Shown here: one piece after another, positions 21,931-25,971 of the stretch
How positions within the stretch are numbered: the first letter of the stretch is position 1
Layout: every line of letters begins with the position of its first letter
NCBI GenBank assembly: GCA_053919585.1
Contig: CM132787.1
Strand: one strand, 5' to 3'
Length of the DNA stretch: 64,000 nt
Source of the DNA: Euprymna scolopes
Taxonomy: Eukaryota
Made by a program: the position numbers and the translations under genes
The notes under the pieces: generated by a model
The model's database searches: none
Told to the model about the DNA's origin: nothing
The model's input: only the letters and a program-made list of their open reading frames with translations

Positions 21931-21997
<67 letters not shown>

Positions 21998-22010
21998 TCA
22001 TCATAGGCCC

Positions 22011-25000
22011 TTAACGTCGAGGACGACGATTGGCAAGGCGCTTCAGTCTTCTACAGTTCAGGAAGTCTGTGTATTGCTGGCAGGATCTTTTGGCACCAGA
22101 TCTTATAGCAGCTTGCCACTTTGCTCGGTTGCCGGCAGAGGTTTCCCAAGTGTTGTGAGGGATGCCGAAGACCTGGAGGTCACGTTTCAGGACATCCTTG
22201 TAGCGGAGGCGTGGCCTGCCAGCACAGCGAGGGGCATCAGCTATCTCTCCAAAGAGAAGTGCTTTTGGTAGCCGGCTGTCGTCCATGCGGCAGGTGTGGC
22301 CAGCCCAACGTAAGCGACGGATGCGCAGCACTGTGTACATGTCAGTACTCTTGGTCGTGGAGAGGATAGCTGTGTTTGGTACATGATCCTTCCATGTGAA
22401 TCCAAGAATTGTGCGCAGGCATCGGAAGTGGAAGGCGTTCAGACGGTGTTCGTGTCGGCGGTAGGTGCACCAAGTCTCACTGCCATACAGGAGAGTGCTG
22501 AGGATGCAGGCCTCGTAAACCTTGATCTTTAGGTGTAGCGAGAGGGACTTGTTCTTCCAGACTCTCTCACTAAGCCTGCCGAAAGTTGTTGATGCCTTTC
22601 CAATGCGGGAGTCCAGTTCACAATCAAGACTGTTGGTGTTATCAACTGTAGAACCCAAGTAAGTGAACTTGGTGACGTTTGACAGTACATGATTGTTTAC
22701 GGTTATTGTGGGTGAAAGCCCAGCAGGCTGGGCAAAGACCACCGTCTTGCCTAGGCTGATTTTGAGACCAAACTCCTCGCAGGCAGAAGCAAAGGAGGAG
22801 CACATTGCCTGAAGCTCAACCTCCGAGTTGGCGATGAAGGCAGCATCATCAGCGTACAGGAGTTCACGGATCTGTACGCGGTTAACCATAGTTTTTGAGC
22901 GTAGCCTGGCCAGGTTGAATAGGCCTCCAGTACTGCGAGTGTGAAGGAGCACTCCAGTTGGGTTTGGGAAGGCTCGGCGCAGAACAGCTGAGAAATATAT
23001 TCCGAACAGAGTAGGAGCTAACACGCAGCCTTGCTTGACACCACAAGAGATGGGGAACTCTTTAGAACGAGAGCCCCCAAACTGTACTGTAGCCTTCATC
23101 TGATCGTGAAATTCTTGTATGGTTTTCAGGAGTTTGGGAGGGCAGCCCAGTAGACGGAGGACTAGAAATAGCCCTGATCTGCTAACATAATCAAAGGCCT
23201 TCGTCAAGTCAACGAAAACAGCATAGAGAGGACGGCCTTGCTCAATGCATTTCTCCTGGATCTGACGAACAGAAAAGATCATGTCAGTGGTAGAGCGGCC
23301 AGGTCGAAAGCCACATTGACTCTCAGGAAGAATTCTGTTGGCAATAATCTGGAGACGTGGCAGGACTAAGCGGGCATAGATCTTTCCAGGCTGGGAAAGT
23401 AGAGATATGCCACGGTAGTTGTTGCAGTCGCAGCGAAACCCTTTGTTCTTATACAGGGTAACTATGTTGGCGTTACGAAGTTCATCGGGAATAGTACCTT
23501 CATTCCAGCAGATTGAGAAGAGATGATGGAGTTCCTCAGTTAGTGAGTCACCACCGCATCTGAAGATTTCTGAAGGTAGCCCATCCACGCCGGGGGCTTT
23601 GTTGTTCCTCAGTAGCTTGATGGTCTTGTGTACTTCATCGATGGTGATGTCATAATCTAGCTCATGGAGGACTGGTAGTTGGGGAACAGCAGCTATTATA
23701 GCAGCCTCACTAGCTGCTACAGGTTGAGCATACAGTGAGCTGTAGTGCTCCACCCAACGGTCAAGCTGATCATCAGGATTGGTGAGTAGTTCTCCGGTCA
23801 GAGATCGCAAAGGAGATGATTTCTTCACAGGAGGACCTAGAGCCTCTTTCAGAGCTTGGTACATGCCACCGGTGTTGCCGGTGGCAGAGCAGTCTTCAGC
23901 ACGCTTGGAGATGTCACTCCAATAGTTGTGTTTAGCCTCTCGAGTTAGGCGCTGCACTTTTGAGCGGCTCTGCTTCCAGAGGCTAGTAGCTTGAGGAGAG
24001 GGGTCCTGCATCACAGCCAGTCTTGCCGCTCGCTTTTCTGCTAGTGCTTGATGGAGTGTGTCCGCGTGGTGTCTGAACCAGTCCGGCTGCTTTACTGTAC
24101 GTCTACCAAAACTGGAGAGTGCGCAAACTCCAACAGTGTCACGAATCCGCAGCCAGGCAGAGGCAGCATCCTGAGGGGGTGCAGACTGGCCAAAGGTGGA
24201 TTGTATTGAAGCTTGAAAATGTTGGCATTTCTCCTTGGACTTAGTAGCAAGAACATTGAGCGTTGAAAGTGGTTTTGAGCAAGACAGGTGGATTTTCTTT
24301 GGCTTTAGTTTAAGCTTACAGCGCACAAGTGAGTGGTCTGTGTCACAGTCCGCAGAGTGCATTGTCCTGCAGTGGATGATATCCTGGAGGTGCTTCTTTT
24401 GAGTGATCACATGGTCCAGCTGGTGCCAGCGCTTAGAGCGTGGGTGTTGCCATGTCATCTTCGACCACGGTGAGCCCTTAAAGAAGGTTGATGGGATGCA
24501 CAGCCTGTGTGTAGCACAGAGTTCCAGAAGACGCTGTCCATTTTCATTCATAGAGCCCACTCCGTGAGGACCCAGGACATCAGGCCAGGCATTGGTGTTA
24601 CTGCCTACACGAGCGTTGAGATCACCCAGGATGATTATGCGGTGACCGCGGTCGATTTTGGAGAGGGTCTCACTCAGCTGGAGATAGAAAGCATCTTTCT
24701 GGTCATCCGGCGAGGTGAGGGTTGGGGCGTAGGCAGACAATAGGGACACTGGACCAGAGGTGGTGTGTAGCTGTAGTGACATTAATCTGGGAGAGATGGC
24801 GACGGGAGTTTCGACAAAGCTGAGCAGCTTGTTGCAGATGGCAAAACCCACTCCATGTTTTGGTCTCTCCAAGTCAGGGTAGCCAGTCCAGTAAAATGTG
24901 AAGTTAGCTTCACGTATGGAGCCATTTCCAGTGAGCCATGTCTCGCCTAGTGCTGAGACATCCACCCCCAACCGGAGTAATTCCAGGTCGATAACAGCAG

Positions 25001-25262
25001 ACTTCCGAGGATGAAAACTGTCAAGAGAGGAAGTCACCCCAAGGGAGCGGACATTCCAGCAGGCCAGGTGTAGTGGGGAGGCAGTAGCAGGATGTCGACC
25101 GGGGCGCGCCTGCCTAGAACGCGGGCCCTGCCGAGCAACGACAGCACCCCCGACTGCAGGGGGCTCCCGAATTGCCAGTCGCTGAGAATTTATTCTTGAC
25201 ATATCCATAGTAGTTGCCTGAAACGTCAAGCGCCGGGGCAGGGAAGTAGTGGATGAGTGCAT
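22011..25262 (-). CDS. RTE polyprotein: AP endonuclease plus reverse transcriptase (1083 aa, uninterrupted)
   Basis: APE motifs WNVRSL, GETWL, GVGF, AYAPT, GDLNARVG, TWQHPRSK.WHQLDH, TDHSLV. RT motifs KAPGVDG, NYRGISLL, QCGFRPGRST, FVDLTKAFD, GVKQGCVLAP.LF, LLYADD, FTYLGS. RTE-type C-terminus RLRWAGH..RM...R.PK, GRPRLRYKD. Confidence 0.95.
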   Translation of the reverse strand: MHSSTTSLPRRLTFQATTMDMSRINSQRLAIREPPAVGGAVVARQGPRSRQARPGRHPATASPLHLACWNVRSLGVTSSLDSFHPRKSAVIDLELLRLGVDVSALGETWLTGNGSIREANFTFYWTGYPDLERPKHGVGFAICNKLLSFVETPVAISPRLMSLQLHTTSGPVSLLSAYAPTLTSPDDQKDAFYLQLSETLSKIDRGHRIIILGDLNARVGSNTNAWPDVLGPHGVGSMNENGQRLLELCATHRLCIPSTFFKGSPWSKMTWQHPRSKRWHQLDHVITQKKHLQDIIHCRTMHSADCDTDHSLVRCKLKLKPKKIHLSCSKPLSTLNVLATKSKEKCQHFQASIQSTFGQSAPPQDAASAWLRIRDTVGVCALSSFGRRTVKQPDWFRHHADTLHQALAEKRAARLAVMQDPSPQATSLWKQSRSKVQRLTREAKHNYWSDISKRAEDCSATGNTGGMYQALKEALGPPVKKSSPLRSLTGELLTNPDDQLDRWVEHYSSLYAQPVAASEAAIIAAVPQLPVLHELDYDITIDEVHKTIKLLRNNKAPGVDGLPSEIFRCGGDSLTEELHHLFSICWNEGTIPDELRNANIVTLYKNKGFRCDCNNYRGISLLSQPGKIYARLVLPRLQIIANRILPESQCGFRPGRSTTDMIFSVRQIQEKCIEQGRPLYAVFVDLTKAFDYVSRSGLFLVLRLLGCPPKLLKTIQEFHDQMKATVQFGGSRSKEFPISCGVKQGCVLAPTLFGIYFSAVLRRAFPNPTGVLLHTRSTGGLFNLARLRSKTMVNRVQIRELLYADDAAFIANSEVELQAMCSSFASACEEFGLKISLGKTVVFAQPAGLSPTITVNNHVLSNVTKFTYLGSTVDNTNSLDCELDSRIGKASTTFGRLSERVWKNKSLSLHLKIKVYEACILSTLLYGSETWCTYRRHEHRLNAFHFRCLRTILGFTWKDHVPNTAILSTTKSTDMYTVLRIRRLRWAGHTCRMDDSRLPKALLFGEIADAPRCAGRPRLRYKDVLKRDLQVFGIPHNTWETSAGNRAKWQAAIRSGAKRSCQQYTDFLNCRRLKRLANRRPRR

Positions 25263-25610
25263 GCCCAGAACAGAACATCCACCTCTGGACCCAACATTGC
25301 GGACCCCAGCGGAGCACAGGAGTGCGACAGCTGGAGCAGTGGTAGGTTGCCCCGCAGTACCCGCTAACTGGGTGTTGATCCCTGACCGTTGATCGTTCTT
25401 GATTCATCCGCTCAGTGATCCGCCATGGGAGACCGGTGGTTGAAAAATATATCAGCTGCGCTCATACCATGACTGCCAACTCCTGCTGCCGAGATGACAT
25501 TTTGCTATTTGACCACATAGCTGGGGTCTGGATTGGTGTAAGCCAGGGCGTGTCCTCACGCCGGAGGGCCATGCACTCAACACCTCTGGGGCTCCAGACT
25601 ACTCCGAGAT

Positions 25611-25886
25611 CCCACATACACTTAGCCTGGGGCCGCAAGGTACCCAGTTAAACCGTGATGTACCACGAGGAGGTGGCATGCGAGTCTTGACCAGTGAGAC
25701 GCTCTAACCACCAGTGGGCAGGGCTTACTAAACTGCCTCCCCTTCACTCTTGCGAGTATAGGTGGCGGTTACAGCTGGAAGCAAGAGGAGAAGAGCACCT
25801 GAAAGCCAAGCAGCTAAGCACTCTACACATTCACTAAGCTACAACACTACACGCTCAAAGGCCCTGTGTGCAACACACCACATCAC
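25611..25886 (-). ncRNA. HDV-like self-cleaving ribozyme at the RTE 5' end
   Basis: P1 GUGAUGU (25886-25880) pairs with ACAUCAC (25661-25655). P3 ACC/GGU closes L3 UCCUCGU. GG follows P1' for P1.1. P4 is CUGGG/CCCAG. J4/2 is GCUAA with the catalytic-position C at 25625. P2 is CUCGCAUGC/GUAUGUGGG. Confidence 0.85.

Positions 25887-25971
<85 letters not shown>

What the first reader, a model, noticed from the sequence alone, without database searches (positions are those of the whole stretch)
25611..25886. HDV-like ribozyme whose cleavage site coincides with the first base of the RTE element
Seen in sequence: every element of the HDV double pseudoknot is present on the minus strand (7-bp P1, P3 ACC/GGU, L3 UCCUCGU, P1.1 GG, P4, J4/2 GCUAA, 9-bp P2). 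P1 starts at G25886, precisely the element/(TA)n junction. J1/2 is very long (about 195 nt), the first P1 pair is G-C rather than G.U, and P2 has a bulged U near J4/2. Established: HDV-like ribozymes process the 5' ends of R2, RTE and related non-LTR elements. Inference: this copy is truly full length, and it can release unit-length RNA from read-through host transcripts without its own promoter.
Basis: partly seen in the sequence, partly recalled or inferred. Interest (0 to 1): 0.85.

Follow-up and report, generated by a model that had tools for sequence, protein, structure and literature searches.

The report
Self-cutting RNA heading an RTE element
The first 276 bases of a young, high-copy jumping gene (an RTE retrotransposon) in a mollusc genome fold into an HDV-type self-cutting RNA whose cut site is the element's first base; this is a well-supported new example of a device already known from mosquito RTE and insect R2 elements.

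Summary
On the minus strand, 25886-25611 carries every part of the HDV double pseudoknot. P1 begins at G25886, which is the first element base in 30 of 30 genomic copies examined. The 13-nt P3-L3-P3' core is identical to the Rfam drz-Agam-1 consensus and to the R2 ribozyme in this genome's own 28S rDNA. Comparison with two 80%-identical copies in a cyprinid fish and with three sister RTE subfamilies here shows strong covariation: 91.8% of cells pair (28-53% when partners are slid), 7 of 10 P2 pairs change on both sides, and P1' always matches the first 7 nt of its own element. The 195-nt J1/2 is closed by a covarying helix, as in large mosquito and R2 ribozymes. No Rfam model reaches threshold, because P1 lies 195 nt from the core. 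Cleavage itself is untested, and my one RNA-seq look showed sense transcripts but no 5' end. Verdict: a genuine HDV-like ribozyme (about 0.88) and a new member of a known kind. First-stage readers of this scan flagged the same device on other pieces of this genome.

The parts
21994..25886 (-). Full-length RTE-type non-LTR retrotransposon (3,893 nt) inserted in a (TA)n tract
   Evidence: The 5' end is shared by 30/30 copies with unrelated flanks. The 3' end is a TAA stop, a 17-nt UTR ending in (TGA)3, then (TA)n. It is colinear at 80% nt identity with two fish copies.
22011..25262 (-). Single ORF, 1083 aa, APE endonuclease plus reverse transcriptase
   Evidence: Pfam Exo_endo_phos 4e-08 and RVT_1 1.2e-32. 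A 100% identical protein occurs in public assemblies.
25880..25886 (-). P1 5' strand GUGAUGU; predicted cleavage is 5' of G25886
   Evidence: Seven Watson-Crick pairs with 25655-25661. It is the first base of the element in 30/30 copies.
25685..25879 (-). J1/2 peripheral domain, 195 nt
   Evidence: Sister subfamilies have 152-207 nt here. Its stability is not above shuffles (z = 0.66).
25860..25863 (-). 5' strand of the helix that closes J1/2 (P1.2-like); pairs with 25689-25692
   Evidence: RNAalifold pairs columns 29-33 with 232-236; three of these pairs change on both sides in 7, 7 and 9 of 24 sequences.
25689..25692 (-). 3' strand of the J1/2-closing helix, ending 4 nt before P2
25675..25684 (-). 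P2 5' strand CUCGCAUGCC
   Evidence: 10 bp with 25611-25621. Seven of 10 pairs change on both sides across relatives. RNAalifold finds it independently.
25662..25674 (-). P3 (ACC/GGU) enclosing L3 UCCUCGU; C25670 and C25669 form P1.1
   Evidence: 13/13 identical to the Rfam drz-agam-1 consensus and to the genome's R2 ribozyme. P3 pair 1 varies A-U / G.U / G-C.
25655..25661 (-). P1 3' strand ACAUCAC
   Evidence: It changes together with the element's first 7 nt in fish copies and in subfamilies A/B/C.
25653..25654 (-). P1.1 guanines
   Evidence: Invariant C-G pairs in 23 distinct sequences.
25627..25647 (-). P4 hairpin
   Evidence: The outer 4-5 bp are conserved. One inner pair switches C-G to U-A in 10 of 23 sequences.
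25622..25626 (-). J4/2 GCUAA; candidate catalytic C at 25625
   Evidence: Fits C-N-R-A. The C is nearly invariant and the U and last A are invariant in the 31-sequence alignment.
25611..25621 (-). P2 3' strand G[U]GUAUGUGGG with bulged U25620
   Evidence: The bulged U is also present in the fish copies and subfamily A, and absent in B and C.
25887..25970 (.). (TA)n target tract on the element's 5' side
21934..21993 (.). (TA)n target tract on the element's 3' side

Best explanation
The first 276 nt of this RTE transcript are an HDV-like self-cleaving ribozyme. When the element is transcribed as part of a longer RNA, P1 (bases 1-7) pairs with the 7 nt that follow P3. P2, P3, P1.1 and P4 complete the nested double pseudoknot. 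The cytosine at 25625 in J4/2 then catalyses scission just 5' of G25886. This removes all upstream RNA and leaves a unit-length template whose first base is the element's first base. The 195-nt J1/2 insert is a peripheral domain whose closing helix holds P1 and P2 near each other. Shown here: the fold, its covariation, and its coincidence with the 5' terminus. Inferred: catalysis, read-through transcription as the RNA source, and any role in translation of the uncapped product.
For: 1. Anatomy is complete and in register. 2. 30/30 copies with unrelated flanks start at G1. The genome holds 255 exact copies of the 22-nt core and 179 of the first 25 nt. 3. The core equals the Rfam drz-agam-1 P3-L3 consensus 13/13. 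It also equals the compact R2 ribozyme in this genome's 28S rDNA, which scores 39.6 bits (E 7e-5) against an Rfam HDV model. 4. Two fish copies that are 80% identical keep every helix. In P1 one pair changes on both sides (A-U to G-C) and two change on one side to G.U. In P2 one pair changes G.U to U-A and one changes G.U to G-C. 5. Sister RTE subfamilies A/B/C (295 core hits, proteins only 34-43% identical) have P1' CACACAC and begin with GUGUGUG. 6. On 23 distinct sequences, 91.8% of cells pair against 28-53% when partners are slid. Nine of 23 pairs change on both sides, and the covariation score is 0.288 against 0.163 in shuffles (0 of 500 reach it). 7. RNAalifold independently recovers P2, P4 and a covarying J1/2-closing helix. 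8. A strict descriptor finds 0 hits in 7.7 Mb of shuffled sequence. 9. The unconstrained minimum-energy fold already forms P1. 10. Literature: RTEs carry HDV-like ribozymes and lack promoters (PMC6765202). P1 and P1' lie 23 to over 700 nt apart in active R2 ribozymes (PMC3774820). A structured J1/2 activates large ribozymes (PMC4908430). 11. Sense-strand RNA-seq reads cover the element.
Against: No cleavage assay and no 5'-OH end have been mapped. No Rfam HDV family reaches its gathering score (best 11 bits against 44). The first P1 pair is G-C, not the canonical G.U. J1/2 is no more stable than shuffles (z = 0.66), and its closing helix is only 4 bp in this copy. RNA-seq gave no pile-up of read starts at base 1. 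A fixed 5' end alone would also fit an internal promoter.
Confidence: 0.88

Rival explanations
1. The fold is real and conserved, but its main job is not cleavage. It may act as an IRES-like or protein-binding platform for the element's own protein, while an internal promoter starting at G1 sets the 5' end.
For: HDV-like ribozymes of R2 and L1Tc are proposed to aid translation and to bind the element's protein, and L1Tc combines a promoter with a ribozyme (PMC6765202, and the PMC3383444 abstract). The core plus about 100 nt downstream is the only stretch of this element that matches the sister subfamilies at DNA level. No read-start pile-up was seen.
Against: P1' co-varies with the very first 7 nt of each lineage. 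That is expected if P1 fixes a cleavage site and is not needed for a downstream platform. The catalytic C, L3 and P1.1 are conserved. The two roles are not exclusive.
Confidence: 0.08
2. It is a decayed ribozyme relic. The ancestor cleaved, but this lineage, with its G-C first pair, bulged P2 and long J1/2, no longer does.
For: The first pair is G-C rather than G.U. P2 has a bulge and three G.U pairs. The closing helix is 4 bp.
Against: 29 sampled copies are identical over the first 330 nt, and 179 places in the genome hold the exact first 25 nt, so the lineage spread recently with this exact sequence. The bulged U is conserved in the fish copies and subfamily A. Subfamilies A/B/C also have a G-C first pair.
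Confidence: 0.03
3. It is a chance resemblance.
For: A loose descriptor with a free 400-nt J1/2 gives about 7 other hits in the window.
Against: The strict descriptor gives 0 hits in 7.7 Mb of shuffles. There is also the covariation, the exact coincidence with the 5' end, and conservation in another phylum.
Confidence: 0.01

Closest known systems
drz-Agam-2 ribozymes of Anopheles gambiae (assignment to RTE elements is from Ruminski et al. 2011, which was not readable here; J1/2 work in PMC4908430)
   Same: An HDV-like double pseudoknot with a long, structured J1/2 insert whose helix brings P1 and P2 together. Its position at the 5' end of RTE-type elements is from my recollection of Ruminski et al. 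2011.
   Different: There is no detectable sequence match to Rfam RF01788. J1/2 here is 195 nt and multi-branched. Its closing helix starts 16 nt after P1, with a small hairpin in between. The host is a mollusc.
R2 ribozymes (Drosophila, Bombyx and other animals; PMC3774820)
   Same: The P3/L3/P1.1 core is the same. J1/2 loops of 216-498 nt are active in silkmoths. P1' evolves to match whatever forms P1. The 5' junctions are variable. This genome's own R2 has the identical 13-nt core.
   Different: R2 is site-specific for 28S and has a restriction-like endonuclease, and its P1 is often made of 28S sequence. Here the element encodes an APE endonuclease, is dispersed with many copies in (TA)n tracts, and P1 is element sequence.
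drz-Agam-1 (Rfam RF01787)
   Same: The P3-L3-P3' sequence ACCUCCUCGUGGU is identical to the model consensus.
   Different: Only this 13-nt stretch aligns (11 bits against a gathering score of 37); the rest of the model does not.
L1Tc ribozyme/Pr77 of Trypanosoma cruzi (PMC3185411, PMC3383444)
   Same: An HDV-like ribozyme in the first bases of a non-LTR element that frees it from co-transcripts.
   Different: L1Tc's 77 nt also serve as a promoter. No promoter activity is known or tested here.

Membership tests
HDV-like self-cleaving ribozyme (nested double pseudoknot) | P1 helix of 6-7 bp whose first nucleotide is the cleavage site | tested here: met
   Seven Watson-Crick pairs, 25880-25886 with 25655-25661. 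G25886 is the element's first base in 30/30 copies. P1 and P1' co-vary in fish copies and sister subfamilies.
HDV-like self-cleaving ribozyme (nested double pseudoknot) | 3-bp P3 closing an L3 loop that starts U-C-C, with a 2-bp P1.1 to the two G after P1' | tested here: met
   ACC/UCCUCGU/GGU followed 7 nt later by GG. P1.1 is invariant and P3 pair 1 varies A-U / G.U / G-C.
HDV-like self-cleaving ribozyme (nested double pseudoknot) | P2 helix crossing P1 (second pseudoknot), stacked on P3 | tested here: met
   10 bp, and 7 of 10 pairs change on both sides. RNAalifold recovers it.
HDV-like self-cleaving ribozyme (nested double pseudoknot) | P4 hairpin between P1.1 and J4/2 (dispensable in some members) | tested here: met
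   The outer stem is conserved and one inner pair switches C-G to U-A.
HDV-like self-cleaving ribozyme (nested double pseudoknot) | Catalytic cytosine in J4/2 in a C-N-R-A context | tested here: met
   CUAA, with the C at 25625. CUAA or CUGA in all relatives except single mutated copies.
HDV-like self-cleaving ribozyme (nested double pseudoknot) | Mg-dependent self-scission giving 5'-OH and 2',3'-cyclic phosphate ends | not testable with these tools
   Needs a bench assay.
Rfam models RF00094, RF02682, RF01787, RF01788 | Score at or above the gathering threshold | tested here: not met
   The best scores are 11.1 bits (RF02682, threshold 44) and 11.0 bits (RF01787, threshold 37). These models cannot span a 195-nt J1/2. 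The compact R2 control in the same genome scores 39.6 bits, also just under threshold. I therefore do not file it under any of these Rfam families, only under the structural class.
Large HDV-like ribozymes with a structured J1/2 (P1.2 type) | A helix within J1/2 that juxtaposes the outer ends of P1 and P2 | tested here: inconclusive
   A covarying 4-5 bp helix joins bases 24-27 with 195-198. It ends 4 nt before P2 but starts 16 nt after P1, and J1/2 as a whole is no more stable than shuffles.
RTE-clade non-LTR retrotransposon | Single ORF with an N-terminal APE endonuclease and an RT, about 3-4 kb in length | tested here: met
   the element is 3,893 nt.
RTE-clade non-LTR retrotransposon | Very short 3' UTR ending in a short tandem repeat rather than poly(A) | tested here: met
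   A 17-nt UTR ending in (TGA)3; the fish copies end in (TGAA)n.
RTE-clade non-LTR retrotransposon | RT phylogeny places it with named RTE references | not tested
   Only an unnamed homologue list was obtained. The clade name rests on architecture.

The most novel reading that the evidence does not exclude
This ribozyme-headed RTE lineage, often found in (TA)n tracts, has recently moved between a mollusc (probably a cephalopod) and a cyprinid fish. Because the ribozyme makes the element independent of any host-specific promoter, it may be part of what lets RTEs establish themselves after jumping between phyla. The conserved J1/2 domain and the conserved block just 3' of the ribozyme would then be host-independent signals for folding or translation.
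Probability: 0.45. Interest if true: 0.55.

Novelty: new member of a known kind. Interest (0 to 1): 0.35.

Why it matters
It adds a well-documented natural set of large HDV-like ribozymes: one mollusc lineage, its fish counterpart and three sister subfamilies. These have J1/2 inserts of 152-207 nt and rich covariation, which is useful for studying how peripheral domains tune HDV-type catalysis. It explains how a family present in hundreds of near-identical copies produces exact unit-length RNA. It also allows exact annotation of RTE 5' ends in this genome. It does not change what is known about how such ribozymes work.

Tried and rejected
Rfam on 10 kb and on 131 nt gave no HDV hit at threshold. 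The listed miRNA and pestivirus hits are (TA)n/(TG)n artefacts.

My one read-laying run used copy L010. Its upstream flank turned out to be another highly expressed repeat that swamped the tables. No start at base 1 was reported and the loose-end list was cut, so the 5' end is unresolved.

Within-family covariation was impossible, because 29 copies are identical over the first 330 nt.

Pattern searches for other P1' or L3 variants found only R2 copies, isolated hits, or numbers equal to the control.

More distant relatives did not help. L049-L051 and L053 are contigs truncated at the 5' end, and L052, L091, L093 and L094 gave no convincing motif with my descriptor.

My loose descriptor is non-specific, with about 7 chance hits in the window, so I do not rely on it.

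Ruminski et al. 2011 (PMC3308841) is not held, so statements about it rest on reviews and on my own knowledge.

Full report
**What is in the sequence.** I read the minus strand and numbered it from G25886 = 1.
- P1 is 1-7 GUGAUGU. It pairs by seven Watson-Crick pairs with 226-232 ACAUCAC.
- P2 is 203-212 CUCGCAUGCC, pairing with 266-276. That is one pair, a bulged U, then nine pairs, three of them G.U.
- P3 is ACC/GGU around L3 UCCUCGU.
- G233 and G234 pair with C218 and C217 (P1.1).
- P4 is 240-260.
- J4/2 is GCUAA, with the candidate catalytic C at window 25625.
- J1/2 is exactly 195 nt.

**The element.** The motif heads a 3,893-nt element (21994-25886, minus strand). It has one 1083-aa ORF with APE endonuclease and RT domains. 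Its 17-nt 3' UTR ends in (TGA)3, and (TA)n lies on both sides. Thirty of thirty genomic copies with unrelated flanks begin at exactly this G. Twenty-nine of them are identical to each other over the first 330 nt, and the window copy differs at two J1/2 positions. The genome holds 255 exact copies of the 22-nt core and 179 of the first 25 nt. Five of the 30 copies carry a partial duplicate of the element's first bases just upstream; in L019 it is 15 nt. This is the kind of 5'-junction variation described for R2, whose RNA end is set by a ribozyme (PMC3774820).

**Chance.** A loose descriptor is non-specific. A strict one requires L3 starting UCC, P1.1 of GG, at least two G-C pairs in P3, P2 of 7 bp or more, and C-N-R-A. 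It hits once in the window and never in 60 dinucleotide shuffles of both strands, about 7.7 Mb. On top of that, seven perfect P1 pairs fall at a 5' end defined independently. The unconstrained minimum-energy fold of the 276 nt already forms P1.

**Databases.** No Rfam HDV family reaches threshold. The sub-threshold matches are still informative: the drz-agam-1 P3-L3 consensus is matched 13 of 13, and RF02682 aligns the core, P4 and GGCUAAG. As a control, the same 13-nt core occurs in this genome's R2 elements inside 28S rDNA. There P1 (GACUCUC) is 28S sequence and J1/2 is short. That compact version scores 39.6 bits (E 7e-5) on RF02682 and lies in a stretch Rfam calls LSU rRNA. The RTE version fails mainly because P1 is 195 nt away from the core.

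**Covariation.** The nearest protein relative (81% aa) is in the cyprinid fish Leuciscus chuanchicus. Two fish copies on contigs of 39 and 48 Mb, one beside RhoGAP and Rpb5 genes, are 99.4% identical to each other. They are 80% identical to the window element along all 3.89 kb.
- Their ribozyme keeps every helix. P1 is GUGGUGU with GCACCAU: G.U at pair 1, G-C replacing A-U at pair 4, and U.G at pair 7.
- In P2 one pair changes G.U to U-A and one changes G.U to G-C.
- The single L3 change falls at a position that is variable in the Rfam consensus.

In the same genome, a pattern search with a G-C first P3 pair found 295 sites against 2 in the control. These belong to three RTE subfamilies whose APE domains are only 34-43% identical to ours. 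Their P1' is CACACAC. Where the flank is unique, they begin exactly with GUGUGUG (L063, L070, L074, L082, L085). Their J1/2 is 152-207 nt.

On a 31-sequence core alignment (23 distinct rows), 91.8% of cells pair, against 28-53% when partners are slid. Nine of 23 pairs change on both sides, seven of them in P2. The covariation score is 0.288 against 0.163 in shuffles, and 0 of 500 shuffles reach it. P3 pair 1 runs A-U, G.U, G-C. RNAalifold, which cannot see pseudoknots, independently recovers P2 and P4.

**The long J1/2.** RNAalifold also finds a helix joining bases 24-28 to 194-198 (in this copy G24-C198, G25.U197, C26-G196, C27-G195). Three of its pairs change on both sides in 7, 7 and 9 of 24 sequences. 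It ends 4 nt before P2 and closes the insert. Published work shows that such a helix ("P1.2") speeds large HDV-like ribozymes by pinching P1 and P2 together (PMC4908430). It also shows that active R2 ribozymes have P1 and P1' 23 to over 700 nt apart, with J1/2 of 216-498 nt in silkmoths (PMC3774820). So the insert length does not argue against activity. J1/2 as a whole is no more stable than shuffles (z = 0.66).

**Expression.** RNA libraries labelled mollusc metagenome, and runs of the same coded species, hold the element. In two stranded poly(A) runs, most pairs have the first mate on the minus strand. In most stranded libraries that means sense RNA. Depth is about 20-30 over the first 670 nt or so, and 3-10 further on. 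RNA-derived contigs run 30-140 nt past base 1 into sequence unlike the L010 flank. That fits read-through transcripts, but DNA carry-over cannot be excluded. No pile-up of read starts at base 1 was reported, and the chosen flank was itself a highly expressed repeat, so the 5' end is unresolved.

**Mechanism and rivals.** The best reading (0.88) is co-transcriptional self-cleavage 5' of G25886. This yields unit-length, 5'-OH RNA from read-through transcripts, as described for RTEs, which are reported to lack promoters (PMC6765202). An internal promoter combined with a fold that serves translation or protein binding is possible and not exclusive (0.08). However, the co-variation of P1' with each lineage's first seven bases is what a cleavage-site helix predicts. 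A dead relic (0.03) fits poorly with 29 sampled copies identical over the first 330 nt and 179 places holding the exact first 25 nt. Chance is excluded for practical purposes.

**Novelty.** HDV-like ribozymes at RTE 5' ends, long structured J1/2 inserts, and migration of P1/P1' are all published. This is a new, well-supported member in a mollusc. Earlier notes of this scan call the genome cephalopod; I did not check that. First-stage readers flagged the same device on other pieces of this genome. My subfamilies A/B/C, with J1/2 of 152-207 nt, probably correspond to some of those notes. The near-identical element in a fish is the most unexpected by-product.

Noticed in passing
L048:2117-6008 and L054:2325-6219 (Leuciscus chuanchicus contigs): Two full-length copies of the same RTE lineage sit in a cyprinid fish genome. 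They are 99.4% identical to each other and 80% identical in DNA to the mollusc element over all 3.89 kb, including the non-coding 5' UTR. The next best protein relative is only 63% identical. L054 lies beside RhoGAP and Rpb5 genes and also abuts (TA)n. This looks like recent horizontal transfer between phyla.
   Followed up: partly
L034:1484-1577 and 13 similar loci; L079: R2 elements sit in this genome's 28S rDNA with a compact HDV-like ribozyme whose P1 (GACUCUC) is 28S sequence just upstream of the insertion site. A second R2 lineage (L079) has P1' AAGAGUC pairing with GACUCUU.
   Followed up: partly
window 25887-25970 and 21934-21993; L001-L030 upstream flanks: The element sits inside a (TA)n tract. 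Six of 30 copies have a strict (TA)n upstream flank and many more have TA- or TG-rich flanks. Five of 30 carry a partial duplicate of the element's first 7-15 nt just upstream (for example L019).
   Followed up: partly
window 25500-25610 (minus strand): The only part of the 3.9-kb element that matches sister RTE subfamilies at DNA level (72-81%) is the ribozyme core plus about 100 nt downstream. RNAalifold predicts a stem there with several pairs changed on both sides. It may be a second conserved RNA element of the 5' UTR.
   Followed up: partly
L010:1547-2170 versus 2170-3327: Sense-strand RNA-seq depth over the first 670 nt or so of the element is 3-8 times that further downstream, despite poly(A) selection. 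This could reflect short derivatives that share the 5' end; L082 is an internally deleted copy.
   Followed up: no
L010:1157-1400: The flank upstream of this copy is another repeat with very high RNA-seq depth (up to about 1,650 reads per position) and many clipped reads.
   Followed up: no
L092:147-490 (metagenome contig, protein 48% identical): A distant RTE relative seems to carry a P4-less version. P1 GGGGGGU lies at the AT-rich/GC-rich boundary, P1' is ACCCCCU with a G.U first pair, J4/2 is CUAA, P2 is one pair, a bulge, then nine pairs, and J1/2 is about 280 nt. P1.1 is unclear.
   Followed up: partly
L061-L090, first 25 nt of subfamilies A/B/C: In the sister subfamilies the P1 strand GUGUGUG can also pair with a conserved ACAC 8-10 nt downstream (a small hairpin predicted by RNAalifold). 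This is a possible transient competitor of P1 during transcription. In the window family P1 lies 8 nt further 5', outside that hairpin.
   Followed up: no
window 25114-25407 (minus strand): A 97-aa ORF overlaps the start of the main ORF. It has no Pfam match.
   Followed up: no
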